DNA of 64,000 nt from the sequence record MK250019.1; one strand, 5' to 3'. Both the position numbers and the translations under genes were made by a program. The notes under the pieces are model-generated. The model did no database searches, was not told where the DNA came from, and worked only from the letters and a program-made list of their open reading frames with translations. Shown here piece after piece: positions 2,909 through 42,851 of this stretch. Each line of letters begins with the position of its first letter. Position 1 is the stretch's first letter.

Positions 2909-3952
2909 TTATGCCTGATAAGAATACTTGTCAAACATTGAATCAATATTAGAGGGATGTACAGCATTAATGCCGATTTCATCGCATTTTCTTAATGTAT
3001 CATGAAAATCATCTATAAGACATACCTCTTTAAGATCCCACTTCATCTTATGAGCAAGCTGCTCAATAAAGACGTGCTTGAAATTTTTATTTCCAACGAA
3101 CATTCGGTTCTCAACAGGAATTTCAGGAAAATATTTATCAAGCCATTCATTCTTCTCCTTCCACGCAATTGAATTGGCACATGCAGTAACAATATATACA
3201 TTATTCATGTCATAATGTTCCTTTACAAAATCAATAACATGTTTCACTGGTTTCAGATTTTTAAATAGTTCGCTACTTACAAAATCGGAATTACCATGAA
3301 TGTCAAGTTTTGCTTTGCCATAACAGGCTAATGTACCATCCATGTCAAGAAGTAAATACTTATTAGTAAAATAATCAACGCGTATGAATTCATCTACTAA
3401 TGGAATATATTTATTCTTACATGCTTCAATACGTAAGTTTTTCTTATAAATATCTTCAACTGGAACTTTACGAGTTCGACCTTGAAGTCTCTTTATACAA
3501 ACTTCTACTGGAGTATCGAAGAATACACAAGTAATCTTATCTACATTATGTTCTCTTAAATAATCTATAATACTAAGATTATAATGATTATTAATTCCAC
3601 CACCATCAAGAATAATATTAACGTTTAGATTTTTTGATTTTGCAATTTCAAAAATCATTCGTCTTGCTAATTGAACAGAATCCTCATGAACAACTTCAGG
3701 ATGTTCATCAGTATATCCTTCTAACATAGGTTTAATTTCATCGGCAGAAATAATCCATGTAGAATTATCAATTAAATTATTCTCTAATGCCTCATTAATG
3801 TCTTCAAATGAATAATCATCAAATGGATGTGTTGTTGACAATAGAGTTGACAACATATCACATAAATGACCTGCATCTGAATAATTATTTGAAATAAACG
3901 TAGACTTGCCAGAACATGGCAACCCTACGAAATACATAAACTTACTGATCAT
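2909..3952 (-). CDS. Polynucleotide kinase/phosphatase-like protein (AAA_33 kinase plus HAD domain; PseT architecture)
   Basis: Walker A GLPCSGKS; HAD motif LLDMDGTL; LIDD. Confidence 0.8.
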   Translation of the reverse strand: MISKFMYFVGLPCSGKSTFISNNYSDAGHLCDMLSTLLSTTHPFDDYSFEDINEALENNLIDNSTWIISADEIKPMLEGYTDEHPEVVHEDSVQLARRMIFEIAKSKNLNVNIILDGGGINNHYNLSIIDYLREHNVDKITCVFFDTPVEVCIKRLQGRTRKVPVEDIYKKNLRIEACKNKYIPLVDEFIRVDYFTNKYLLLDMDGTLACYGKAKLDIHGNSDFVSSELFKNLKPVKHVIDFVKEHYDMNNVYIVTACANSIAWKEKNEWLDKYFPEIPVENRMFVGNKNFKHVFIEQLAHKMKWDLKEVCLIDDFHDTLRKCDEIGINAVHPSNIDSMFDKYSYQA

Positions 3953-3958
3953 AACCTA

Positions 3959-4894
3959 TTATAAATTAAATTGATCTTTAATTCTATCCCATTTTCTATG
4001 TAATATATCTGTACATTGTATAGCATAATTATATAACTTAATAACATCATTTTTTCTAGAAAAATATGCTTGTATACAATTATGATTATCTATACGTAAA
4101 TGAAAATTAATATTATAATACTAATTAATAAGATTAAATAATTCAATATATAAAGATTTCCAACTTATATGATTACTTATTGATATTGATATACTATTTC
4201 TCGATTTAGAAATACATCCATCACCATCTAGAAATCCTATTAAAAAATATATTAAATATACTTTATCATAGAATATTGAAATATCTGGAGGATTATATGT
4301 TTTCTACTTATTTATGAGATTAAAAGTTTTTAACCATTTTTCACAAAATGATTTATCTCCTATACGTATATAACAATTCATATATTTCCCAAAAGTAGAA
4401 TTTGCTTCATGTTCTCTAACATTTGTATTTAATTTATCTGCTAATAACTATAAATTATGTTTATCTTTATTAGAAAGAGATATAATAAATTCATTTCTTG
4501 CAGATATACAACCGTCAGCCATAAAAAATCCCCACCAATAATAGACTTCTTTATTATTTAAATTATTCATAAAATTTAAATTACCATGTCTACGACGATT
4601 TATATTATGTGAAAATTTCATTCGTTCACACGCTTGAAACTAAATAGCATTATAACTAAGATTTGGAAATGCATCTAATAATTCCTATTTAGATGCATTA
4701 TACCATAAATCTCTTAATTTTTCATTATTTTCATTAGTCCACTTAAAATTACAATGTATTTGTAATTCATGAGCTTTCTTTTTAATTGCACTTTTTGTTC
4801 TATTTGGTAATAATTTAATACATTCAGTTAATCCTGATATAGGATAATACTACTTTAATATATTAATTTCATTATCAGTCCAAAAATTATACAT
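3959..4894 (-). mobile_element. Free-standing double-motif LAGLIDADG homing endonuclease (311 aa, TAG=Gln)
   Basis: WGFFMADGCIS and IGFLDGDGCIS motifs; 936 nt open apart from at least 5 TAG codons. Confidence 0.85.
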
Positions 4895-4912: not shown

Positions 4913-6493
4913 TTAGATTGTGCCATCAAGAAGTTTATGAACTGCATCTTGACGTGTTTTACGAATTTCTGCAAGTGTAAACTCTTTTACAAGCTTACCG
5001 TCTTCAAACACCGTCTTCAATTCATTCTTATCTGATGCTTCATCTTCAATAGAAACTCGATCAATAGGTTTATAATTACCATTTTCATCCTTTACAACCA
5101 TAATAAGACCACGATGTGATTTCTTTGGTGTACCAGTAACAGTCTTTGGATCTTTAAAAATTTCAATAGATTTCCCATTTACAGAGCACCATGTTGCCTT
5201 ACATGCAAATGCTAATTGATCTCTAGTATTCATTTGAAAAGAAAATGATCCAATTCCCAAAATCAAATTAGTAGCAGCAAACATCTTATCTTCAAGTTGT
5301 GCATAAATCATTCTTTGACGTTTCATATTGATAGAATCACCATAAAGAAGTCCAATATGTGTATCAAGTACTTTATATCCCTTCTTATTAAATGTTCCAC
5401 CAAATATATTCCAAAGAAATTCATATGAACCCATCTTTACAAATTGATCATTTGCTTCTGAATCACCACAAATAATCTTTACAGGATCACCACTATCAGG
5501 ACGGATAACTACTCGACCATTTCGACTCATAATCTGTTCCTTATACTTAGGTACGATCTTTGTAATAAAATACCAATAATCATAGCCGTCTGCTACAATA
5601 GAAATAATACCATCAGGAAATTCATCAAGCATTCTCTTAAAATAAATTTCATCATCAGGAATACCAGAATCATTTGTTGCATTTGAACATTCCACTGAAT
5701 GTTCTGTTGCTGGTACTGTAGCTGCAATTAATTCTTTCTTAGGGTCTGCTTTATAATAGTACTCAATCATTTTAATTGCAGGTACCGATTCAGAACCACA
5801 AAATGATGTAAGATGTGCCATGCCTGAAGTGATTGTAGTTTCAAGAGAACTCATACCTCTCATTGAAAAATCATGACACAAAAAATCAAGGTTAGACAAA
5901 TCATTAGGATTATAAAAACCTGTTTTCATTGCATGTCTAACAAGTTCACGTCTATAAACATCTGAAATTGTAGCGGATGTCATTGGTTGCCACAAAATAT
6001 TTGAAAGAATAGACTCCAAATAATTAGTAAGCCAAGCAAAATCAGGATGTGTGTTTGTGATTGTCAAAACAGGACATCCGATTGGACAATATGAACCTTC
6101 AGGAAGTGCCTTAATTCTAATAGGGAGATAACCAAGCTTATGCAAAGCAATAATATGATCTACTCCTACTTTCTTTGCAACTGCTTCACCAAGAAATGAT
6201 GTAGTTAAATCAGTATATGTTTTTCTAACAGTATCTTCATCAAGGTTAAAGAAGAAATTATTAAACGTATTAATAAGATACTTCTTGATAAAATACTGAA
6301 TACCAAATACAACTACACCTTCATTTGCCTCTGGGAGGTACTTATTTCCTCGTGGTGTAAAATTACTAAAAAGTTGTGTCATTCCCTTAGGATACATACA
6401 GTGATGACCAAGCTTGTAGCCATCAGTCATAAGCATTGCATTGAGAAGTATGTCTTCTACCATTACATGCTGAGAATCTTTTACGTTTGTCAT
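4913..6493 (-). CDS. nadV: Nicotinamide phosphoribosyltransferase (NAMPT)
   Basis: TDGYKLGH, HDFSMRG, PATEHSV, VIRPDSGDP, LLYGDSI. Confidence 0.95.
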   Translation of the reverse strand: MTNVKDSQHVMVEDILLNAMLMTDGYKLGHHCMYPKGMTQLFSNFTPRGNKYLPEANEGVVVFGIQYFIKKYLINTFNNFFFNLDEDTVRKTYTDLTTSFLGEAVAKKVGVDHIIALHKLGYLPIRIKALPEGSYCPIGCPVLTITNTHPDFAWLTNYLESILSNILWQPMTSATISDVYRRELVRHAMKTGFYNPNDLSNLDFLCHDFSMRGMSSLETTITSGMAHLTSFCGSESVPAIKMIEYYYKADPKKELIAATVPATEHSVECSNATNDSGIPDDEIYFKRMLDEFPDGIISIVADGYDYWYFITKIVPKYKEQIMSRNGRVVIRPDSGDPVKIICGDSEANDQFVKMGSYEFLWNIFGGTFNKKGYKVLDTHIGLLYGDSINMKRQRMIYAQLEDKMFAATNLILGIGSFSFQMNTRDQLAFACKATWCSVNGKSIEIFKDPKTVTGTPKKSHRGLIMVVKDENGNYKPIDRVSIEDEASDKNELKTVFEDGKLVKEFTLAEIRKTRQDAVHKLLDGTI

Positions 6494-7242: not shown

Positions 7243-7282
7243 AATTTTTATTTTTTAATTGTTTATTATTTCATTAACAATA

Positions 7283-7292
7283 CAAAGATACA
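7283..7292 (-). promoter_or_regulatory. TGTATCTTTG -7 box
   Basis: About 40 nt upstream of the ATG at 7242. Confidence 0.75.
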
Positions 7293-7337
7293 CATTTTAT
7301 TCCAAATAAAAAAATATATAAAGATAAAAACTATATT

Positions 7338-7740: not shown

Positions 7741-8118
7741 TTATTGTTTAATTTCTCTTTCTAAAATATTCTTTAATACCCATAATAACATATTATATGC
7801 AGTTTCTAACATATTATCATCTGCCGTAGTTTCTGCATGATAAATATCATCATTTTTAATATATTGTAATTGAATACATACAGGAGTAATAACAAGGAAA
7901 TAATCTAATGTTATAATATCATCAATACGTTTATAAATATCTTCTAACGTATATGTATAAAAACCTAATTTACATTTGATAATAGTATCAATATACTTTT
8001 CATTTTTATTTAAATTATATTGTCCCTTACCCATATAAACAAGGGAAGCATCTGAAACATCAAGACCTGCATTAATAAGAGTATCCATCTGTTTCTTTGT
8101 TAAAGCTATTTTGTTCAT
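7741..8118 (-). CDS. Hypothetical protein
   Basis: 125-aa ORF, first gene after a promoter box. Confidence 0.7.
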   Translation of the reverse strand: MNKIALTKKQMDTLINAGLDVSDASLVYMGKGQYNLNKNEKYIDTIIKCKLGFYTYTLEDIYKRIDDIITLDYFLVITPVCIQLQYIKNDDIYHAETTADDNMLETAYNMLLWVLKNILEREIKQ

Positions 8119-8144
8119 AATTATTTCGTTTTTATATTACTATA

Positions 8145-8154
8145 CAAAGATACA
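8145..8154 (-). promoter_or_regulatory. TGTATCTTTG -7 box
   Basis: 27 nt upstream of the ATG at 8118. Confidence 0.75.
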
Positions 8155-8223
8155 TATTTTATTCTAAATAAAAAAGAGAGATACTAAAATATAAAGTATC
8201 TCTCTTAAAATTATTATTAATTA

Positions 8224-9240
8224 TTACATGATATATTGTAAAAGCATTCTTGTTTCTTCATCTTGCCCGAGTTTTTTATTAGCCTCTCTCAAAATCTAAT
8301 TAACTCGTGTTTCTGTCATATTGTTTTCTTCTGCAATTTGCCAGGTATTTTTCTCTGGACGACCATTAATAGCGTAGCATGCACAAACAATTTCACCATT
8401 TCTTTTACCCATAACTCTCTTGATATTATCTTCAAGTTCTCTTGTTATATCTTCATTTTCAAGGTTACTTCCAGGCTCATTGAAAACATTATTTGTTGTC
8501 ATATCACCTAATGTTACTTTAGAATCTCCATCATCTCCAACAGATTGATCTAAACTATTTGCACGAGCATTTGCTTTCATCGTCTATACAAATGAATCAT
8601 AAGTTAAATTAGGGTGTTTCTTAACTAATACATCATAAATATCATCAATATCAGGTTCATAACCATTCTTATTAAATAAACGTTCTTTTACACGAGCAGC
8701 TTCACGAGCAATACTACCCATATTACGAGGAACTGCCATATGACCACCTACTTCATCAACTGCCATCATAATCTCTCGACGAATATACCAAATAGCATAT
8801 GATACAAATTTTACATCTTTTTCTGGTGTACTTGGATCATATGTTTCAGCTGCTTTCATAAGTCCAATATTACCATATTGAATTAAATCTTCTTTAGGAA
8901 TATTAAGATTTTTATACTTATTAACAACAGTAACAACAAACGGAAGATTTGCAGAAACTAATTTATTTTTTGCTGCCTCTACCTATCTCTTATTTGACGA
9001 ATGCTGAATAATATCTGCAAGTTTGCATTCATCTTCATGTGTTAATCTTTGTTTCTTATTAATTGCTTTTAAATATGCTACAAATGATTTTGCTGTATTT
9101 TCATCCTATGTAATAGTAAAATCATCATGTAAATCCATATGCATTCCATTATTATCTTCATTAAGAGTATTTCGTAATGAACGAGAAATACCTTCCATAA
9201 GGCTATTATACAATGCTTTCTTTTTATTAATTACTCTCAT
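8224..9240 (-). CDS. RNA polymerase sigma-70 family factor (338 aa, 4 TAG=Gln)
   Basis: Region 1.2 YLKAINKKQRLTHEDE; region 2 LVSANLPFVVTVV..DLIQYGNIGLMKAAETYD..KFVSYAIWYIRREI; region 4 HTH TWQIAEENNMTETRVN(Q)I. TAGs at 9106, 8983, 8584, 8296. Confidence 0.9.
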
Positions 9241-9331
9241 ATTTTATTTAATAAATTAATTTCAATAATTTATTATATTTATCAATATATAAAAATAGAG
9301 AATAGTTATCCCAACTATTCTCTATTATAAT

Positions 9332-9892
9332 TTAGTTATCCTGTACAATATTTAATATATGTTTAATCTTTTCTATATCATTATCTGTTATCCCTGTATA
9401 ATTATCAATGTGCACAAAATTATTCATTTGTTTGTCTAACATATCTTTATCATCATCTACAATACAATACTCTATATTTAAATTATCACTATTAAAAAAT
9501 TTTATATCATATAATGCAATATTATATGTTTGTGCACTTTTATCTAATACAATCGTTAAAAAATCATCTATTTCTTTTCCACGTGGTATATTATCTAAAT
9601 TTATATAATTTGGTGTTATTCCGACCATATATTTGTTTAAGGGTTTTAAATCTTTATATCGTTCAAATTCATGTTTTGTTGCTTCTAATGTAAATATTCT
9701 CCAAGATGATGATATAACTAATCTTACATTATACTTTTCACAAAGTTCTTTTATTTTAAAAACTGCTTTTTTATCGATAAAAATATCTCCTCCATTTTTT
9801 ATATATTCTTTTCCTTTATCATTTTCTGTACACCATATTGCATATTCTTCGGAATTTAAAACACCATCTATATCTAAAAATAAAAGTTTCAT
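9332..9892 (-). CDS. HAD-family protein (Swiss-Army-knife RNA-repair type)
   Basis: LFLDIDGVLNS, VISSSWR, YCIVDDD. Confidence 0.8.
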   Translation of the reverse strand: MKLLFLDIDGVLNSEEYAIWCTENDKGKEYIKNGGDIFIDKKAVFKIKELCEKYNVRLVISSSWRIFTLEATKHEFERYKDLKPLNKYMVGITPNYINLDNIPRGKEIDDFLTIVLDKSAQTYNIALYDIKFFNSDNLNIEYCIVDDDKDMLDKQMNNFVHIDNYTGITDNDIEKIKHILNIVQDN

Positions 9893-9916
9893 AATTTACA
9901 ATATATCTTATTTCAT

Positions 9917-10243
9917 TTAATCATCATCAAAATTATCATATATAGAAATTTTATTCTTTTTTCGTTCTTTCTGCTTTTCAATACACGGGAAACAGTATTC
10001 ACCAATACCTTTTATATATTTTTCATTTGTATATGTTGGTTCACCTTTAAAATTAAAATTTCGTTGTTCACCGTATGCAATATGTTTCTTCTTTTTCCAT
10101 TTAACAACTTTATCATGTTGTACTTCAATATCTCGAAGCTCTTTATATTTATTTTTTATTTTATATTTTTTATCGCCTTCTATAACAAAACTAGATGAAC
10201 CTTTTTTACTAATTTTATGTGACTGATGATAACTTCTAGACAT
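9917..10243 (-). CDS. Basic hypothetical protein
   Basis: 108-aa ORF within an operon. Confidence 0.65.
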   Translation of the reverse strand: MSRSYHQSHKISKKGSSSFVIEGDKKYKIKNKYKELRDIEVQHDKVVKWKKKKHIAYGEQRNFNFKGEPTYTNEKYIKGIGEYCFPCIEKQKERKKNKISIYDNFDDD

Positions 10244-10541
10244 CTTTTATATTATATATTTTATTTTTAAAATGTTTTAAAAAATCTTGATATTGCTCAT
10301 AATTTAATTCAATAAAATCATATTTTAATTTAAAATCAGTATTATTATTTGATAAACCATAATAAGAATCTGGTTGTTTATACAAAATCTGTTTATTGTA
10401 ATAAATTTTATATGTATCGTACATACGATTTGAATAACCAGTAGGCTTATATATTTCGACAGAAATAATACTACTTATCGGTATAATTTTACCATCTGAT
10501 GTACTAATATAATCATATTTTTTCTTTAATTTTATTGACAT
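10236..10541 (-). CDS. Hypothetical protein; ends at TAG, or 7 aa later at TAA 10215
   Basis: 101-aa ORF overlapping the next start. Confidence 0.65.
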   Translation of the reverse strand: MSIKLKKKYDYISTSDGKIIPISSIISVEIYKPTGYSNRMYDTYKIYYNKQILYKQPDSYYGLSNNNTDFKLKYDFIELNYEQYQDFLKHFKNKIYNIKDV

Positions 10542-10551
10542 ATTTTTTTAA

Positions 10552-10953
10552 TTAATATTCATCATCTATTTCATCACATAAATCTAAAAATTCCTCCTGT
10601 ATTGCATTATCCAAAATTTGAAATTCTCTGCGTTCGTTATATTCGTCTTCTGATTTAATCGCATCTGCCCAATCTGCATCAATATCATATACTTTTCTTG
10701 TATCTGTTGACATAACACGAATCATATTATGAATTTCTTTTTGCTTTCTGAATCCATAATCAGAAATATATCGTTCTACAAGAATTTCTTTTTTAAATAT
10801 AGGAATAATACAAATGAGTTTCGTATTCATTTCATCTTTCTCACATGAATGAATACCAGGAATCAACAATACAGACTTACCTGTTTCTACATTTATATTA
10901 TATGATGTATTACTGCGAAGAAATACAAGATCACCAATTTTAAATTCTGCCAT
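10552..10953 (-). CDS. Hypothetical protein
   Basis: 133-aa ORF after a promoter box. Confidence 0.7.
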   Translation of the reverse strand: MAEFKIGDLVFLRSNTSYNINVETGKSVLLIPGIHSCEKDEMNTKLICIIPIFKKEILVERYISDYGFRKQKEIHNMIRVMSTDTRKVYDIDADWADAIKSEDEYNERREFQILDNAIQEEFLDLCDEIDDEY

Positions 10954-10993
10954 AATTTTAATATCTTATTAATATTGTTTATTATTTACAATA

Positions 10994-11003
10994 CAAAGAT
11001 ACA
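10994..11003 (-). promoter_or_regulatory. TGTATCTTTG -7 box
   Basis: About 40 nt upstream of the ATG at 10953. Confidence 0.75.
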
Positions 11004-11107
11004 CATATTATTTGAATTAAAAAAATAAAAAAAGAAAAATCTTAATATATTATTTCTATAATAAGAATATATATATTAAGATTTAACGTTTTAAGCCTAT
11101 GAAATAG

Positions 11108-18484: not shown

Positions 18485-18605
18485 TATTATGCTTTTATTT
18501 AGTTTTTATATTTATTATATATAAAAATAGGTAATATGTTTATGAAAAATACATATTACCTATCAAACAAAATTAAACAATTAAATATATATATTATGAA
18601 AAATG

Positions 18606-18997
18606 TGGAGACATCCGGAGTCGAACCGGAGTATTACTAACTTGTCAATAATAAACTATCTACGTGCGTATTTCTTAATTAGTTTTCATCATACATTCTT
18701 AGGAGTTAAACAGTTTAATGTCTTAATCACTCTTATTGGACAAAAAGTATAGTGAGTTTTATTTAACAGAGAAAACACTCACCGAACTCCGTGGCGATGC
18801 TCAACTTACCTTGTAAGGAGCAAATGCTTCAATGGGTTTATATTACCAATCCTACCGGATTAAGCTGCCATACGAAAATCAATTTCGTCGTCATTTAAAT
18901 TTATTTGCTAAATTTCTTTGTATTACTACAAAAGGCTTTTAACTTTCCTACACGATTTATTATCACATAATTAATAAGCAAAACCAAAAATGTCCCC
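18606..18997 (-). ncRNA. ssrA: tmRNA (one-piece), tag about (A)DDEIDFRMAA*
   Basis: GGGGACA/TGTCTCC acceptor with G3.U70; T arm CCGG-TTCGACT-CCGG; internal GAC GAC GAA ATT GAT TTT CGT ATG GCA GCT TAA. Confidence 0.9.
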
Positions 18998-20167: not shown

Positions 20168-20199
20168 AATTTCTATTTTTCTTTCATTAATTTATATCT

Positions 20200-20209
20200 C
20201 AAAGATACA
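20200..20209 (-). promoter_or_regulatory. TGTATCTTTG -7 box
   Basis: 33 nt upstream of the ATG at 20167. Confidence 0.75.
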
Positions 20210-20276
20210 TAAAAGTTTTTAAAATAAAAAATGGAGACTATATGAATAATCTCCATTTAATGTATAATATCATTTT

Positions 20277-20828: not shown

Positions 20829-20866
20829 AATTGTAAAAAATTAAAAATATTACTAATGTCATGTCG

Positions 20867-20938
20867 TTGGGGATCCGAGACTCGAACTCGGCCTAAGAGT
20901 TTTAGAGACTCCTGTACTGACCACTATACTAATCCCCA
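20867..20938 (-). tRNA. Amber-suppressor tRNA, anticodon CUA, Gln-type body
   Basis: TGGGGAT/ATCCCCA (U1-A72, G2-C71, G3-C70); GGAGT-CT CTA AA-ACTCT; CCGAG-TTCGAGT-CTCGG. Confidence 0.95.
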
Positions 20939-20968: not shown

Positions 20969-21739
20969 TTATTCTATATAATCGCTTAATTTCTATTTGT
21001 AATGATAATATGTTGATTTACATACATTATATTTAGTTAAAAAATCTGATTCTGATATATTATTTACAATATCATTCTTCATATCTACTGTTAATTTACT
21101 GCAACCATTAGAATTAAATAACTATATCTTCTCATTATATTTAGATATTTTCTACATTAATTCTTGTTTATCACGTGATAATATATATCGTTTTTTAACT
21201 AAAAGATTACTGACACTACCTCTTGTAAAATTAACATTCATATCACGTTTTAATTGTTGTAATGATGTAGATGAAACAATATTCTTTGTATTTACATCAT
21301 AACAATATATTGTATGCCTTCCATCATTCTATTTTTCATATGATTTTTTCTAAACTATTAATTTCTATTCATCTGTGAATTTATATCCATCAATACCACC
21401 ATCACCACCTTTTGTTTGATTATAACCAGTAGCTCCATAACTATTATATTTACGAATATACTATTTTTCTAATAGATCTAATTGTTGTTTTATATCAGAC
21501 GTGATATAATTATCAAATGTTTTTAATATATATAATGAAAAGGAATCTATACCATATTTCTTAAATGCTTTATATATTGGCGCATTATATCTATTATTAA
21601 CAGAATTATTAATATGATGTAATAATCTTTTATGTAGATTTATACTCTAACCAATATAACACTTTTTATTTATATCATTCTAAATCATATAAATACCCGG
21701 ACACTATGGTATATTATTTATAATATCATCTTTACTCAT
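20969..21739 (-). mobile_element. GIY-YIG (Seg-like) homing endonuclease (256 aa, many TAG)
   Basis: GIYMI(TAG)NDINKKCYIG(TAG)S and GYNQTKGGDGG; 771 nt in frame. Confidence 0.9.
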
Positions 21740-21771
21740 AATAATTTTTAATATTTAATAACCATATTTTG

Positions 21772-21845
21772 TAGCCCCACTCAGATTCGAACTGAGTCAG
21801 CGAAAGTTAGAGTTTCGAATACTTAAACCATTACATCATAGGGCA
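21772..21845 (-). tRNA. Second amber-suppressor tRNA, anticodon CUA, Gln-type body
   Basis: TGCCCTA/TGGGGCT (1:72 mismatch); CGAAA-CT CTA AC-TTTCG; CTCAG-TTCGAAT-CTGAG. Confidence 0.93.
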
Positions 21846-23928: not shown

Positions 23929-25644
23929 TCAATTCAAACCTGTTACTTTTCCATCTACAAAATCAATATGCTTAGCTGCTGGTTCTTTAGGTAATCCTGG
24001 CATACGCATCATATTTCCTGCAATAACAACAAAAAATTCTGCACCATTATTAATCTTTATTTCATCTATATTAAATATTGTATTATTATTTACAGATGGA
24101 ATAACCTTAGGATTATCAGAGAATGAATATTGTGTTTTTGCCATGCAAATAGGATATTCATAAATTTCATTAATAAATTCATCTTCATGATTTTCATATG
24201 TTCTATCAAATCTTGAAATAAATTTTAATGCATCTTTTGAATATCTTATATTATCTGGATTAATACCATATACATTTTTACATAGATCCGCAATTTTTTC
24301 CTTCATACTATCTAATGTATGATATGCAAAAATAGGTAACATTGGTTTCCTATTATTGTCTACAATATCAACAACCTCTTTTGCAAGATCAATAGCACCA
24401 TCACTGCCATTTAAATAACTTGTATTCTTAATACATTTTACATTTCTACATGTACAGAAATTCTCAAGAATACGCTGTTCATTATTTGTATCAGTATCAA
24501 ATACATTATTTGTTACAACAATTCTTACACCAAATTTCTTAATATTTGTAATATGTTGTTCAAGATTCTTTAATCCAATTTCAAGTGATTTAATATCTTC
24601 TTTAGATAGATCTGTACATCCACCTTGATTTTTCAATCCTGGAATTGTCGCAACTAATACTACAACATCTGGACATAAACCATTCTTTCTACATTTAATA
24701 TCTATAAATTTCTCTGCACCAAGATCTGAACCAAATCCTGCTTCAGTAACCACATAATCACATAATGATAAACCCATACGTGTCGCAATAACAGAATTAC
24801 AACCATGAGCAATATTAGCAAATGGTCCACCATGAACAATAACAGGATTATTATCCAAACTTTGAACAAGATTTGGTTTAATTGCATCTGATAGTAAAGC
24901 AACAATAGAACCTGTTATACCTAATTCACTGCAGAACATAAAACTACCATCTATACGTTCTGCAATAATAATCTTATTGATACGTCTGCGAAGATCATCA
25001 ATATCACGTGCCATACAGAAAACTGCCATTAATTCAGAAGCGGGTGTAATATCAAATCCTGTTTGAATTAATTTACCATATTTCTGTGTTGTATATATTG
25101 TTCGAAGAGAACGATCATTAATATCTAAACAACGTCTAAATGTAATATTTTTAATTTTTGATTCTTCTTCTAGATTCTGATAAAAATAATTATCAATAGC
25201 AGCTGCAATCATATTATTTGCAGTTGTTATAGCATGAAAATCTCCTGTAAAATGTAAATTAATTTTATCCATAGGAACAATCTGTGAATAACCACCACCA
25301 CATGCACCTCCTTTCATTCCGAAACAAGGTCCTAATGATGGTTCGCGTAACACCGCGATTGAATTTTTCTTGAGTTTTCGAAGTGCATCATTCAATCCAA
25401 TACTTACAGTTGTTTTACCAATACCAGATTTAGTAGGACTAATAGAAGTAACAAGAATAAGATGTTTATCTGTATAACTTGTATACGGTTTCATTAATTC
25501 CAAAGGAATCTTTCCCATATACTTTCCATACATTTCAATATTTCCATTTGATGGTATATTACCTGTAGGAAATAATTTATTAAAAACACAATCAATACTT
25601 TGCATAGATGCTTCTTGAGCAATCTGAATATCTGATTTCATCAT
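23929..25644 (-). CDS. fhs: Formate--tetrahydrofolate ligase
   Basis: MKSDIQIAQ, GIGKTT, REPSLGPCFGMKGGACGGG, INLHFTGDFHAIT, HGGPFANIAHG, MRMPGLP. Confidence 0.97.
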   Translation of the reverse strand: MMKSDIQIAQEASMQSIDCVFNKLFPTGNIPSNGNIEMYGKYMGKIPLELMKPYTSYTDKHLILVTSISPTKSGIGKTTVSIGLNDALRKLKKNSIAVLREPSLGPCFGMKGGACGGGYSQIVPMDKINLHFTGDFHAITTANNMIAAAIDNYFYQNLEEESKIKNITFRRCLDINDRSLRTIYTTQKYGKLIQTGFDITPASELMAVFCMARDIDDLRRRINKIIIAERIDGSFMFCSELGITGSIVALLSDAIKPNLVQSLDNNPVIVHGGPFANIAHGCNSVIATRMGLSLCDYVVTEAGFGSDLGAEKFIDIKCRKNGLCPDVVVLVATIPGLKNQGGCTDLSKEDIKSLEIGLKNLEQHITNIKKFGVRIVVTNNVFDTDTNNEQRILENFCTCRNVKCIKNTSYLNGSDGAIDLAKEVVDIVDNNRKPMLPIFAYHTLDSMKEKIADLCKNVYGINPDNIRYSKDALKFISRFDRTYENHEDEFINEIYEYPICMAKTQYSFSDNPKVIPSVNNNTIFNIDEIKINNGAEFFVVIAGNMMRMPGLPKEPAAKHIDFVDGKVTGLN

Positions 25645-29609: not shown

Positions 29610-29996
29610 TTAAAATGAATGTATATTATTATCAAGACTTGTCATTTCAGATGCTTTAAATTTACCATAAATCTTATTCCATCCTTTTGATAAACCGTTA
29701 CATAACATACTGGTATAATATGCAAATGGATTACTAAATCGTTCTGGATCAAAGCTTCGCCAATACATTGCAACATCCAACATTGCTGTCTGTATACAAT
29801 CTTCCTTATCCTCTTGACATTTATAATGTTTCTTTTTTGCTAAATTTTCAGCAATTAACTAAAGCATGACAACAGCATTATATGTAAGTTCATCTCTCTA
29901 TTTTGAAAGAACTATTTCTTTCATTAACTCTTTATTCTACACATATGGTTTTCCACCTTTAGTTTTAATACCTTCTACTTTACTAAAATCTTCCAT
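29610..29996 (-). CDS. T4 gp55-like late-transcription sigma factor (128 aa, TAG at codons 20, 33, 46)
   Basis: PYV(Q)NKELMKEI, ML(Q)LIAENLAKK and SFDPERFSNPFAYYTSMLCNG parallel gp55 YVNNKEL, MLIAEGLSKR and [21 protein letters not shown]. Confidence 0.8.
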
Positions 29997-30060
29997 GGTT
30001 TTTAAATAAAAATAGCTATTTCTTATTTTACTAAGAAATAGCTAAAAAGTTTTAATAAAT

Positions 30061-31146
30061 TTATTTATTAATTGCTTCCAAATGTTCCTTTTCATTAGGT
30101 GTTAAATTATCAGGAATCAAATAATGTACGCATACAAAATAATCTCCTCTTTGATTCATATCAGGTCGTTTAAGACCTTCACCAGATAATCGCATAACTG
30201 TACCTTCTTTAATACAACTCTGTAACTTTATTGTTTTTGATACACCAGAAGGTATATTAACTGTATATGAACAACCAAGTAATAGTTTATAATAAGGTAC
30301 ATGAATATGCTCTATTACATTCAAACCATCAACTTGATATTTGTTTGTATCAAATTTATAATCAGCTATAGCAATAAAATTACCATTCTGCCCAACTGAT
30401 TTCTTTGATTCTGATCCTTTACCACTATATACTTTATATTCACCATTCTGAATGCCTGTATTAAATTCAATTTCAATCTTTACTTCTTGCTTTTCAAATC
30501 CAGAACCACCACAATGATTACATTTATTTTCTACATAGAAACCTGTTCCATGACATAATGGACAAATTTCTTCTTGAATTGAAAATGTTCCTCTTCCTAT
30601 AAGAGACTGGTGAATAATTTTTCCTGCACCATGACACTTTGGACATGTTTTCTGCCCAGTTCCACCGGCACCATGACATGACGGACAACGTACATCTCTC
30701 TTATATTTAACAACCTTCTTAATACCATTAAATATATCTTCAATAGTAACAGGAATTTTCATTTGAATATCTCTGCCTGGTTGAACTTGATTTCTCTGTT
30801 GTTTAGCACCTCCAAAACCGCTAAATCCTCCAAATGGATTAAATCCTCCAAATGGGTCAAAACCCGATCCACCAAATGGATCAAAACCTGAACCACCAAA
30901 TGGATTTTGCTGACCATTTTCATCACCATATGTATCATAATTCTGTTTCTTCTGTGGATCACTCAATACTTCATATGCATGATTCACATCCTTAAATTTC
31001 TCTTCAGCTTCTTTTACTTCAGATGGTGATTTACCTTTCTGCATATCAGGATGATATTTCTTTGAAAGTTTTCTATATGCTGTCTTTAAGTCTTTCTCAT
31101 TACAATCTCTAGAAACACCTAAAATTTCGTATAAGTCTTTTGCCAT
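30061..31146 (-). CDS. dnaJ: Chaperone DnaJ
   Basis: J domain with HPD, G/F repeats, four CxxCxGxG zinc-finger motifs. Confidence 0.97.
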   Translation of the reverse strand: MAKDLYEILGVSRDCNEKDLKTAYRKLSKKYHPDMQKGKSPSEVKEAEEKFKDVNHAYEVLSDPQKKQNYDTYGDENGQQNPFGGSGFDPFGGSGFDPFGGFNPFGGFSGFGGAKQQRNQVQPGRDIQMKIPVTIEDIFNGIKKVVKYKRDVRCPSCHGAGGTGQKTCPKCHGAGKIIHQSLIGRGTFSIQEEICPLCHGTGFYVENKCNHCGGSGFEKQEVKIEIEFNTGIQNGEYKVYSGKGSESKKSVGQNGNFIAIADYKFDTNKYQVDGLNVIEHIHVPYYKLLLGCSYTVNIPSGVSKTIKLQSCIKEGTVMRLSGEGLKRPDMNQRGDYFVCVHYLIPDNLTPNEKEHLEAINK

Positions 31147-37056: not shown

Positions 37057-37096
37057 AATTTTATATTTTTTAATTGTTTATACTTTATTTATATTA

Positions 37097-37106
37097 CAAA
37101 GATACA
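37097..37106 (-). promoter_or_regulatory. TGTATCTTTG -7 box
   Basis: About 40 nt upstream of the ATG at 37056. Confidence 0.75.
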
Positions 37107-37164
37107 TATTTTATTTCAAATAAAAAAATCAGTTACCTAAAAAAATAGATAACTGATTTAATAT

Positions 37165-41526: not shown

Positions 41527-41566
41527 ATCTTTATATTTTTAATTGTTTATTATTTTATTAACAATA

Positions 41567-41576
41567 CAAAGATACA
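41567..41576 (-). promoter_or_regulatory. TGTATCTTTG -7 box
   Basis: About 40 nt upstream of the ATG at 41526. Confidence 0.75.
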
Positions 41577-41612
41577 CATTATTCTTTAAATAAAAAAATA
41601 ATAGCCAAATAA

Positions 41613-42851
41613 TTATTGTTTATTAATCCATTCTTTTACTTCATTAATATTCCAAAATTCTATATAATTCAAATTATTCTACTATGATATATTCCTTTTT
41701 TTCAAATCTAATATAGTCCATGTATAAATAATATTATCATATTGTGACTTCTTACCATTTTTATGTGCATTAGAATTTTCTGCTTTTTCTTTTAAGTTAT
41801 TCAGCTCATTTAAATCATATTCATTATTTTCATTAAATGGATGATAATGATGATAATGAGATCCGTTATATTCAATATATAAATCTAATGATGGTATATA
41901 AAAATCACAATTAAATGGATACAATTCTGATTTATATTGTCTAATACAATCTGAATATTTTTCTTTTAATAAATCAAAACATACATCTTCTTGATATGAT
42001 ATATTAAATGAATTATTTAATAATTTTGTATTATAAATTTTTTTCTATATTTCATTACTACTTAATATAGATGAAATTAAATTTTTATAGTATTGTGTCT
42101 ANNNNNNNNNNNNNNNNNNNNNCTTTTCTAAACATGTATTTTTTATTTTATCTTTTACATATTTAAGTTGACCAATATTTACGATACTATTAATATCATC
42201 TTCATTAGAAGCATATTTTTTAATACATGTATCTAATGACTAATTTCGAAATTTTTGAACTTTAAATACAGAATCAACACCATACTTTTCTAAACATGCT
42301 TTATGAGTTTTTTCTATTTTTTCAGGAATCTAACCTGTATACTCAACACCATATTTTTGTAAACATGTTTCTTTTGATTTTTGTTTAAATATTTCAGATT
42401 TTAAAGGGGATGTTACTCCATATCTTTGTAAACATGTTTCTCTTGCTTTAATTCTATTAGAATAATGTTCATCTCCATATTTTAATAAACATGTTTCTCT
42501 TATTTTATTATTAATCTATTGCTTTTTATCTACATCACTATATATGTCTTTTAATACTTTTTTAACTGTTATACCATCTAACATATTTGCATGTTCTTTA
42601 CAACATGTTTTATTAAATAATTGATTCTTTTTACCATTCAAAAATTTAACAGGTTTTCCACAAATAACACATACAGGGCGAACCTCTATATTATACTGTA
42701 TTCTCTTAATTGTTTCTCTTAATGACTATGAATCAGTATAGCGATTATCTAAATATTCCTTATACTCCTCAGAAATATTAGTTAATCGCTATACATTTAC
42801 ATGTCCATTAGATTTAATAAAATAATCTAATATAATCTAATCTGTTACCAT
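41613..42851 (-). mobile_element. Putative homing endonuclease, paralog of 33430-34437, with tandem CLxKYGV repeats; spans an N gap; TAG=Gln
   Basis: MVTD(TAG)IILDY..., CVICGKP, repeated TCLQ(R/K)YGV, YPFNCDFYIPSLDLYIEYNGSHYH. Confidence 0.7.

What the first reader, a model, noticed from the sequence alone, without database searches (positions are those of the whole stretch)
8224..9240. Full-length phage sigma70 that needs four UAG readthroughs
Seen: regions 1.2, 2, 3 and 4 are intact, and in-frame TAGs separate them (codon 45, just before region 2, between regions 2 and 3, and within the region 4 HTH). There is a GATAAATA late-like box upstream (9276-9283). Inference: this second sigma is also under code control. 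Partial readthrough would give truncated sigma fragments that might compete with the host sigma.
Basis: partly seen in the sequence, partly recalled or inferred. Interest (0 to 1): 0.7.

Follow-up and report, generated by a model that had tools for sequence, protein, structure and literature searches.

The report
Late sigma gene in TAG-recoded megaphage
This is an intact sigma-70-type transcription factor gene of a Prevotella Lak megaphage, a phage already known to read TAG as glutamine, and its four TAGs mark it as one of the phage's late genes rather than being a control device special to this gene.

Summary
Window 8224-9240 (minus strand) encodes a 338-aa sigma-70-family protein with in-frame TAGs at codons 45, 86, 219 and 315, and no other internal stop.

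The window is Prevotella phage Lak-A2, a published code-15 (TAG=Gln) megaphage, so these are sense codons read by the phage's own tRNA-CUA (two genes lie in the window). They are not leaky readthroughs. TAG315 sits at the near-invariant Gln of region 4.2. In orthologs the TAGs alternate with CAA/CAG.

Window genes fall into two classes, TAG-free and TAG-rich, and each class has its own upstream box:
- TAG-free genes carry the Bacteroidetes-type TATCTTTG.
- TAG-rich genes carry the T4-late-type NATAAATA.

It is kept in every ortholog checked, down to 32% identity.

TAG positions drift between relatives. The Lak-B1 ortholog has no TAG but keeps the box, so the TAGs are a class signature that duplicates the late promoter. 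No evidence supports functional truncated fragments: the first stop would leave a 44-aa peptide.

The case is a known phenomenon applied to one more gene. The mildly interesting points are that an RpoD-like sigma is a late gene, and that the phage carries three sigma-like genes, two of them TAG-dependent.

The parts
8224..9240 (-). Sigma-70-family gene: 338 codons plus TAA stop (8226-8224). In-frame TAG codons at 9108-9106, 8985-8983, 8586-8584 and 8298-8296.
9276..9283 (-). GATAAATA box, a variant of the late-type NATAAATA element, with 35 nt between it and the ATG. It is conserved as GATAAATAT in the Lak-A, -B and -C clades, and as [G/T/A]ATAAATA in orthologs of 32-49% identity.
9294..9326 (-). 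Intrinsic-terminator hairpin (15 pairs, then a T run) that closes the upstream TAG-free operon and insulates the sigma gene.
   Evidence: -15.9 kcal/mol, z -5.5. RNA-library depth drops here.
8168..8206 (-). Terminator hairpin and T run directly after the sigma gene's stop codon.
   Evidence: -15.6 kcal/mol, z -5.3. Conserved in orthologs.
8145..8152 (-). TATCTTTG early-type box (Bacteroidetes -7 consensus TAnnTTTG) of the next, TAG-free gene. Listed as the contrasting promoter class.
20866..20938 (-). tRNA with anticodon CUA and a Gln-like acceptor stem (U1-A72, G2-G5). It is the decoder of TAG.
   Evidence: (60.5 bits)
21771..21845 (-). Second tRNA-CUA call. It is weaker (1:72 mismatch) and did not reach the Rfam gathering score.
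29610..30095 (-). gp55-like minimal late sigma factor, the likely reader of NATAAATA boxes. The 161-codon open frame has 4 TAGs. The probable true start is the ATG at 29996, which leaves 3 TAGs.
   Evidence: (phrog_234, 9e-11)

Best explanation
The gene is an intact, functional late-class gene of Prevotella megaphage Lak-A2. It encodes an RpoD-like sigma factor with regions 1.2 to 4 and no region 1.1, like Bacteroidota primary sigma.

The four TAGs are glutamine sense codons in the phage's code-15 regime. They are decoded by phage tRNA-CUA, and a TAG-free phage RF2 covers TAA and TGA.

The gene is a self-contained unit: terminator, NATAAATA box, ORF, terminator. It is most likely transcribed from a T4-type late promoter by host core RNA polymerase carrying the phage's gp55-like factor. 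So it is made only late, when TAG is already readable.

The dependence on TAG decoding is real, but it is a property of the whole late gene class. For this gene it duplicates the late promoter, because TAG sites drift and one clade has lost them.

Shown here: gene integrity, TAG=Gln, class membership, box conservation and TAG turnover.

Inferred: late timing; that gp55-like reads the box; and that the sigma redirects host core polymerase to a phage promoter class different from host sigma-A's. Its region 2.4 and 4.2 contact residues differ from the Bacteroidota consensus. Which promoters it reads is unresolved.
For: Identity of the window:
- Window 8000-9400 is 100% identical to Lak-A2 MK250019.1. 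The offset is confirmed again near 29.7 kb.

TAG = Gln:
- All four sites carry CAA or CAG in some ortholog.
- Position 315 is Gln in 60 of 63 distant sigma homologs and aligns with the RQI glutamine of region 4.2.
- The tRNA-CUA has a Gln-like acceptor stem.
- The literature reports the same reassignment (PMC6784885, PMC8346664).
- A TAG-free RF2-type release factor is present.

The gene is functional:
- dN/dS is 0.12-0.28 over the whole frame.
- The fold and the sequence match sigma factors over the full length.

Gene classes:
- Window genes have either 0 TAG or about 20-60% TAG among Gln-type codons. The sigma gene has 4 of 11.
- Class is conserved between Lak-A2 and Lak-B1 in 48 of 53 ortholog pairs.

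Promoters:
- In the window, AATAAATA lies at -30 to -40 before 10 of 17 TAG-containing genes and 0 of 22 TAG-free genes. TATCTTTG lies before 0 of 17 and 6 of 22 (the motif was chosen after seeing the data).
- A held-out test on the rest of Lak-B1 gave [AGT]ATAAATA in 68 of 116 versus 29 of 166 (p 9e-13), and TATCTTTG in 0 of 116 versus 37 of 166.
- In an unbiased 8-mer scan of Lak-B1 upstream regions, GATAAATA occurred 22 times against 1.6 expected.
- The box is kept in all sigma orthologs checked, while the flanking sequence diverges.
- A gp55 homolog is present in all four clade representatives searched.

RNA:
- In three RNA libraries the upstream TAG-free operon has about 20-200 times the contig depth of the sigma gene. 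The drop falls at the terminator.
Against: - No time-resolved expression data exist. Early and late are assigned by analogy with T4 late promoters and the Bacteroidetes -7 consensus.
- The RNA evidence comes from assembled contigs. These cannot give transcript ends, strand or reliable levels, and DNA carry-over is possible.
- The sigma box starts with G and lies at -43, slightly further upstream than the A-variant boxes (-30 to -40).
- TAG codons are about 1.5 times over-represented among Gln-type codons in the first 20 codons of Lak-B1 genes. Four distant sigma orthologs carry a TAG at codon 5-6. Both hint that TAGs may be selected as a gate, not merely tolerated.
- An RpoD-like sigma made late has no obvious job in a simple early-to-late scheme.
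Confidence: 0.75

Rival explanations
1. The four TAGs are a dedicated translational switch on this sigma, and incomplete readthrough yields truncated sigma fragments that compete with host sigma.
For: - Translation does need TAG decoding.
- TAGs occur in 14 of 16 orthologs.
- TAG is enriched near the 5' end genome-wide.
- A product ending at codon 218 would carry regions 1.2, 2 and most of 3, including the conserved core-binding region 2.2.
Against: - Sites are not conserved.
- Lak-B1 and a second B-like genome have no TAG but keep the same promoter box.
- The first TAG, at codon 45, would yield a 44-residue peptide with no sigma domain.
- Longer fragments would need success at two TAGs followed by failure at the third.
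- The gene already has its own late-type promoter and is insulated by terminators on both sides.
Confidence: 0.12
2. The TAGs are a selected translational gate that acts together with the late promoter, as a double lock, but without any functional fragments.
For: - Strict two-class pattern, conserved across clades.
- 5' enrichment of TAG.
- TAG-rich homing-endonuclease genes sit inside TAG-free operons with gaps of 6-18 nt, where only translation can discriminate.
- The gp55-like gene keeps 3-4 TAGs in all clades.
Against: - For this gene the gate is dispensable in the Lak-B lineage (0-1 TAG).
- In Lak-B1, 10 of 64 late-box genes with 8 or more Gln-type codons are TAG-free.
- The pattern is also what relaxed selection against TAG in late genes would produce.
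Confidence: 0.3
3. The gene is a decaying pseudogene, or the TAGs are sequencing or assembly errors.
For: Under table 11 the frame is broken four times.
Against: - Only TAG interrupts the frame, never TAA or TGA.
- dN/dS is 0.12-0.28.
- More than 100 near-full-length relatives come from independent samples, and every locus examined is a full-length open frame, needing TAG=Q in most.
- The same TAG sites recur in independent assemblies.
Confidence: 0.02
4. TAG is decoded as something other than glutamine, for example tyrosine.
For: In one ortholog TAG alternates with TAT at codons 45 and 219. ARAGORN labels the tRNAs 'Pyl' by default.
Against: - CAA or CAG is found at all four sites in orthologs.
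- Codon 315 is at a near-invariant Gln.
- The tRNA acceptor stem is Gln-like.
- TAT and CAT are one-base neighbours of TAG at variable positions.
Confidence: 0.03

Closest known systems
Code-15 (TAG=Gln) late genes of Lak and crAss-like phages (Devoto 2019, PMC6784885; Crisci 2021, PMC8346664; Borges preprint 10.1101/2021.08.26.457843)
   Same: - In-frame TAGs confined to a subset of genes, together with phage tRNA-CUA and RF2.
- TAG arises by CAG-to-TAG change.
- The proposed role is to delay late and lytic proteins.
   Different: Those papers discuss structural, lysis and replication genes. None mentions a sigma factor or promoter classes: 'sigma' occurs 0 times in the Borges preprint, and 'promoter' occurs 0 times in Crisci 2021.
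Bacteroidota primary sigma factor (RpoD/sigma-A, about 287 aa, no region 1.1)
   Same: - It is the closest cellular family. The alignment consensus with the roughly 285-295-aa hits is the Bacteroidota type.
- Relatives of one such hit lie in Prevotella genomes.
- The domain order is the same, and region 2.2 is conserved.
   Different: - Only about 30% identity.
- A 45-residue N-terminal extension.
- NCBIfam RpoD models score far below their cut-offs (110 against 354 bits).
- Contact residues differ: region 2.4 reads WYIRRE against the consensus WWIRQS, and region 4.2 reads TETRVNQI against xxERVRQI.
T4-type late transcription (gp55 with TATAAATA; NATAAATA in T4-like cyanophages, from my own knowledge)
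   Same: The gene carries a NATAAATA box at the position seen before other TAG-rich genes. The genome encodes a gp55 homolog.
   Different: This protein is not gp55. It is a full-length sigma that appears to be a target of that system. T4 itself has no RpoD-like sigma.
RpoD-like and minimal sigma factors of group 2 jumbo phages (Iyer et al. 2021, PMC7824862)
   Same: [quoted passage not shown]
   Different: It gives no statement on timing, promoter or TAG content.
Phage sigma factors SPO1 gp28/gp34 and phiEco32 gp36 (from my own knowledge and abstracts listed)
   Same: Phage-encoded sigma-70-family proteins that retarget host core RNA polymerase.
   Different: Those act as middle or late switches made early, in the standard code. 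Here the sigma gene itself looks late and is recoded.

Membership tests
Sigma-70 family, group 1/2-like architecture | Region 2 (core binding, -10 recognition) | tested here: met
   Pfam PF04542: 47.6 bits against a cut-off of 24, residues 94-159. The region 2.2 motif is conserved and the aromatic residues of 2.3 are kept.
Sigma-70 family, group 1/2-like architecture | Region 3 | tested here: met
   Pfam PF04539: 28.3 bits against a cut-off of 25.3, residues 180-241.
Sigma-70 family, group 1/2-like architecture | Region 4 helix-turn-helix | tested here: met
   Pfam alone is below its cut-off (16 against 24.1). However, alignments to solved RpoD/RpoS run through 4.2 to residue 331, the model has helices 258-337 at pLDDT 90-97, and Foldseek aligns the full length to sigma chains.
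Sigma-70 family, group 1/2-like architecture | Region 1.2 | tested here: inconclusive
   Pfam gives 13.8 bits against a cut-off of 22. PDB alignments start at residues 47-55, and the model shows helices 47-80.
Sigma-70 family, group 1/2-like architecture | Binds core RNA polymerase and directs promoter-specific initiation | not testable with these tools
   Needs biochemistry.
Housekeeping RpoD ortholog | Scores above the curated equivalog cut-offs | tested here: not met
   Best NCBIfam hits score 95-128 bits against cut-offs of 354-572. It is a divergent phage lineage, not an RpoD ortholog.
Code 15 (TAG=Gln) gene | Only TAG interrupts the frame, and TAG aligns with Gln in relatives | tested here: met
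   (Gln in 60 of 63 distant homologs at position 315).
Code 15 (TAG=Gln) gene | A cognate tRNA-CUA and a release factor that spares TAG are encoded by the genome | tested here: met
   tRNA-CUA at 20866-20938. An RF2-type factor with SPY in place of SPF, and with no TAG, is present in Lak-A2 and Lak-B1.
Code 15 (TAG=Gln) gene | Gln is actually inserted at TAG in the protein | not testable with these tools
   Needs peptide mass spectrometry.
T4-type late gene | NATAAATA box shortly upstream of the gene | tested here: met
   GATAAATAT at -43, conserved in all orthologs checked. The box class is associated with TAG-containing genes.
T4-type late gene | gp55 homolog in the genome | tested here: met
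   phrog_234, E 9e-11. Present in the four clade representatives searched.
T4-type late gene | gp33 co-activator, and late timing of the transcript | not tested
   gp33 is reported for group 2 jumbo phages in PMC7824862 but was not searched here. Timing needs an infection time course.

The most novel reading that the evidence does not exclude
The genetic-code switch may sit inside a three-sigma relay:
- a TAG-free ECF-like sigma that can be made at once;
- a gp55-like late factor that keeps 3-4 TAGs in every clade and so can only appear after tRNA-CUA;
- this RpoD-like sigma, which is both driven by a late box and TAG-containing.

Because it is made last and has altered -10 and -35 contact residues, it may not serve the current late phase at all. 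It could instead drive a final promoter class, or be loaded into the very large capsid to seize host core polymerase at the start of the next infection.
Probability: 0.15. Interest if true: 0.65.

Novelty: new member of a known kind. Interest (0 to 1): 0.33.

Why it matters
It adds a transcription factor to the list of genes whose production depends on the phage's change of genetic code.

Across a whole Lak genome, TAG use tracks two distinct upstream boxes, a host-type early box and a T4-type late box. That gives a sequence-only way to assign timing classes in an uncultured 540-kb phage. It also gives a concrete way to test whether recoding is a selected gate or just tolerated in late genes.

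The practical lesson for annotation is that this gene, called with table 11, breaks into fragments.

Tried and rejected
- The two-piece match to Lak-A genomes, spanning 2145 bases for a 1401-base query, looked like an insertion. It is only a second copy of the repeated hairpin-plus-early-promoter cassette.
- No whole genome is held for the window. I worked from the Lak-A2 and Lak-B1 GenBank records instead.
- The literal word GATAAATA is not enriched in the window. The signal appears only when upstream position and the A/T variants are considered.
- The E. coli-type promoter scan gave no more hits than shuffles (21 against 24), so it is uninformative here.
- Database proteins of full length first suggested TAG-free orthologs. 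The loci showed that the gene caller had read TAG as Q.
- Cluster names were almost all empty.
- RNA runs are kept only as contigs, so transcript starts and strand could not be read.
- A search for a third promoter motif that this sigma might read gave only weak candidates (TAAACTAT-like words), and nothing links them to the protein.
- The first 5'-enrichment test could have been inflated by over-long ORF starts. The enrichment persisted after I restricted it to genes without alternative starts, but more weakly.
- No complex prediction was run, because no binding claim rests on it.

Full report
**What the window is**

Window 8000-9400 is 100% identical to Prevotella phage Lak-A2 (MK250019.1). 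Window position x equals record position x + 124000, and the same offset holds near 29.7 kb. Lak phages are the roughly 540-kb megaphages for which TAG-to-Gln recoding (code 15), a tRNA-CUA and an RF2 gene were published in 2019 (PMC6784885). The finding therefore lies in a genome whose alternative code is already established.

**The observation**

The minus-strand frame 9240-8224 has 338 codons. It contains four internal TAGs (codons 45, 86, 219, 315), no TAA or TGA, and a TAA stop.
- Read with TAG=Q it matches Sigma70_r2 and r3 above Pfam's cut-offs, and r4 and r1.2 below them.
- It aligns with solved RpoD/RpoS chains over residues 47-331 (E 4e-25).
- It gives a confident model (pLDDT 83.8) that Foldseek aligns over the full length to group 1/2 sigma chains.
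- TAG45 is in a disordered linker before region 1.2. TAG86 is at the start of helix 84-97, just ahead of the Pfam region-2 match. TAG219 is inside region 3, not between regions 2 and 3. TAG315 is in the 4.2 recognition helix.
- dN/dS against orthologs is 0.12-0.28, so the whole frame is under purifying selection.

**What TAG means here**

- Every one of the four sites carries CAA or CAG in some ortholog.
- Position 315 is Gln in 60 of 63 distant homologs. It aligns with the conserved glutamine of the RQI motif of region 4.2.
- The window holds two tRNA-CUA calls (20866-20938 and 21771-21845). The first reaches 60.5 bits in Rfam and has a Gln-like acceptor stem.
- A TAG-free RF2-type release factor is present in Lak-A2 and Lak-B1.
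- These are sense codons in a reassigned code, not leaky stops.

**Two gene classes and two boxes**

Under code 15 the window's 65 ORFs split into two groups. One has no TAG. In the other, TAG makes up about 20-60% of Gln-type codons. The sigma gene has 4 of 11. TAG-rich genes include the portal, a lysozyme-like protein, a papain-like peptidase and three homing endonucleases.

Upstream regions differ by class:
- TAG-free genes with room for a promoter often carry a long conserved cassette containing TGTATCTTTGTAT. This holds the Bacteroidetes -7 consensus TAnnTTTG (the consensus is from my own knowledge).
- TAG-rich genes carry AATAAATA 30-40 nt before the ATG.

Window counts (the motif was chosen after looking at the data):
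- AATAAATA: 10 of 17 TAG-containing genes against 0 of 22 TAG-free genes.
- TATCTTTG: 0 of 17 against 6 of 22.

To test this on fresh data I fetched the whole Lak-B1 genome. Outside the parts orthologous to the window:
- [AGT]ATAAATA precedes 68 of 116 TAG-containing genes against 29 of 166 TAG-free genes (p 9e-13).
- TATCTTTG precedes 0 of 116 against 37 of 166 (p 6e-10).

An unbiased 8-mer count of Lak-B1 upstream regions ranks TATCTTTG (45 found, 2.4 expected), GATAAATA (22, 1.6) and AATAAATA (68, 5.9) among the most enriched words. The genome also encodes a gp55-family minimal sigma (window 29610-30095; phrog_234, E 9e-11).

**The sigma unit**

A 15-pair hairpin with a T run (9326-9294) ends the upstream TAG-free operon. 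The box follows at 9283-9276 and the ORF starts at 9240. A second hairpin with a T run (8206-8168) follows the stop codon. After that comes the early box of the next gene at 8152-8145. The gene is thus an insulated single-gene late unit inside an early region.

Contigs from three RNA libraries show the upstream operon at roughly 20-200 times the depth of the sigma gene. The fall lies at the terminator, and the sigma gene is covered at low depth. Flat DNA carry-over would not produce this pattern. Contigs cannot give transcript ends or reliable levels, so I treat this as consistent evidence, not proof.

**Orthologs**

Sixteen orthologous genes were read at the DNA level.
- Lak-A/C-like genomes (88-100% identity) carry 2-5 TAGs. 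TAG alternates with CAG/CAA at codons 45, 86, 219 and 315, with TAT at 45 and 219, and with CAT at 68. Further TAGs appear at codon 318 in these genomes and at codon 331 in Lak-B2.
- Orthologs of 71, 76, 49, 34 and 32% identity carry 1-4 TAGs at other places. Four of them have a TAG at codon 5-6.
- Lak-B1 and a second B-like genome have none, and Lak-B2 has one.
- All of them keep the hairpin (where alignable) and a [G/T/A]ATAAATA box 35-45 nt before the ATG, while the surrounding sequence diverges.
- Among 53 reciprocal-best ortholog pairs between the window and Lak-B1, 28 are TAG-free in both and 20 are TAG-containing in both. Four of the five discordant pairs differ by a single TAG. The sigma gene (4 against 0) is the only larger switch.
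- TAG-free genes behind a late-like box are not rare in Lak-B1: 10 of 64 such genes with 8 or more Gln-type codons.

**Interpretation**

But it is a class property. For this gene it duplicates the late box, and it is dispensable in one clade.

The fragment-competition idea has no support. Termination at the first TAG leaves 44 residues with no sigma domain. Longer fragments would need two successful decodings followed by a failure.

Two observations keep a selected gate on the table. First, TAG's share of Gln-type codons in Lak-B1 is about 0.6 in the first 20 codons against about 0.38 further in. This survives restriction to genes without alternative start codons (36 genes observed against 24.5 +/- 3.2 expected, 0 of 2000 shuffles; with the stricter set, p 0.025). 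Second, TAG-rich homing-endonuclease genes sit inside TAG-free operons with gaps of 6-18 nt, where only translation could discriminate.

**What the sigma does**

This remains inferred.
- Its closest cellular relatives are the roughly 287-aa Bacteroidota primary sigma family, at only about 30% identity.
- It scores far below the RpoD equivalog cut-offs.
- The residues corresponding to the -10 and -35 contact positions of E. coli sigma-70 (numbering from my own knowledge) differ from the Bacteroidota consensus. The differences are conserved within the phage family.
- I therefore expect a promoter specificity different from host sigma-A, but could not identify the target class.
- Lak genomes carry three sigma-like genes: a TAG-free ECF-like one, the gp55-like one with 3-4 TAGs in every clade, and this one.

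**Novelty**

The following are all published: code 15 in Lak, TAG use in late modules, CAG-to-TAG substitution, and the presence of minimal and RpoD-like sigmas in this phage group. I found no paper that links TAG use to promoter classes or mentions TAGs in a sigma gene.

The finding is a correct reading of a known phenomenon in one more gene, with a modest new angle.

Noticed in passing
window 18603-18997 (-): A phage-encoded tmRNA (Rfam RF00023, 58.2 bits against a gathering score of 47; ARAGORN tag peptide DDEIDFRMAA). It lies just downstream of the portal gene, in a phage that reassigns a stop codon.
   Followed up: partly
window 8141-8206, 7250-7330, 10960-11040, 20170-20250, 37060-37140, 41530-41610 (-): A repeated intergenic cassette: hairpin, T run, then a nearly identical early box ...AATAAAATNTGTATCTTTGTAT.... 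It precedes TAG-free genes only. It resembles the mobile 'promoter-early stem-loop' cassettes of T4-type phages (from my own knowledge). It caused the spurious second match piece.
   Followed up: partly
window 3959-4894 (-), 20969-21739 (-), 41613-42851 (-): LAGLIDADG, GIY-YIG and a third homing-endonuclease gene are among the most TAG-rich genes (43-62% of Gln-type codons). They sit inside otherwise TAG-free gene runs, two of them with gaps of only 2-18 nt. The GIY-YIG gene lies between the two tRNA-CUA genes.
   Followed up: partly
window 29996-30061 (-) and Lak-B1 record 402855-402920: The leader of the gp55-like late-sigma gene holds an AATAAATA box overlapping the stop of the upstream J-domain-like gene. 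A 13-pair hairpin with a T run follows, only about 13 nt before the ATG. Both features are conserved between Lak-A2 and Lak-B1. This could be an attenuator or an autoregulatory arrangement.
   Followed up: partly
Lak-B1 whole genome (loci L018, L019, L024-L048): TAG codons are over-represented in the first 20 codons of TAG-containing genes. TAG's share of Gln-type codons is about 0.6 there against about 0.38 downstream. The effect is still significant after excluding genes with alternative start codons.
   Followed up: partly
window 9332-10953 (-): In three metatranscriptome assemblies the TAG-free operon upstream of the sigma gene reaches contig depths of thousands, against tens for its neighbours. 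The operon comprises a HAD_SAK_2 protein and three small unknown proteins behind an early box near 11000.
   Followed up: no
Lak-A2 record about 219100-220050 (locus L005 1108-2058, -), outside the window: A third sigma-like gene: 316 aa, ECF-like regions 2 and 4, TAG-free in all four clade representatives searched. Neither the early nor the late box is upstream.
   Followed up: partly
Lak-B1 upstream regions lacking both boxes: Words such as TAAACTAT and TTAAACTA are about 10 times enriched. They may mark a third promoter class.
   Followed up: no
window 4913-6493 (-), 23929-25644 (-), 2909-3952 (-): Host-like metabolic genes, all TAG-free: nicotinamide phosphoribosyltransferase, formate-tetrahydrofolate ligase (680 bits), and a kinase/5'-nucleotidase fusion.
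   Followed up: no
Lak-A2 record 287896-288246 (locus L062): The phage RF2-type release factor has SPY where RF2 normally has SPF (the SPF motif is from my own knowledge). It is TAG-free.
   Followed up: no
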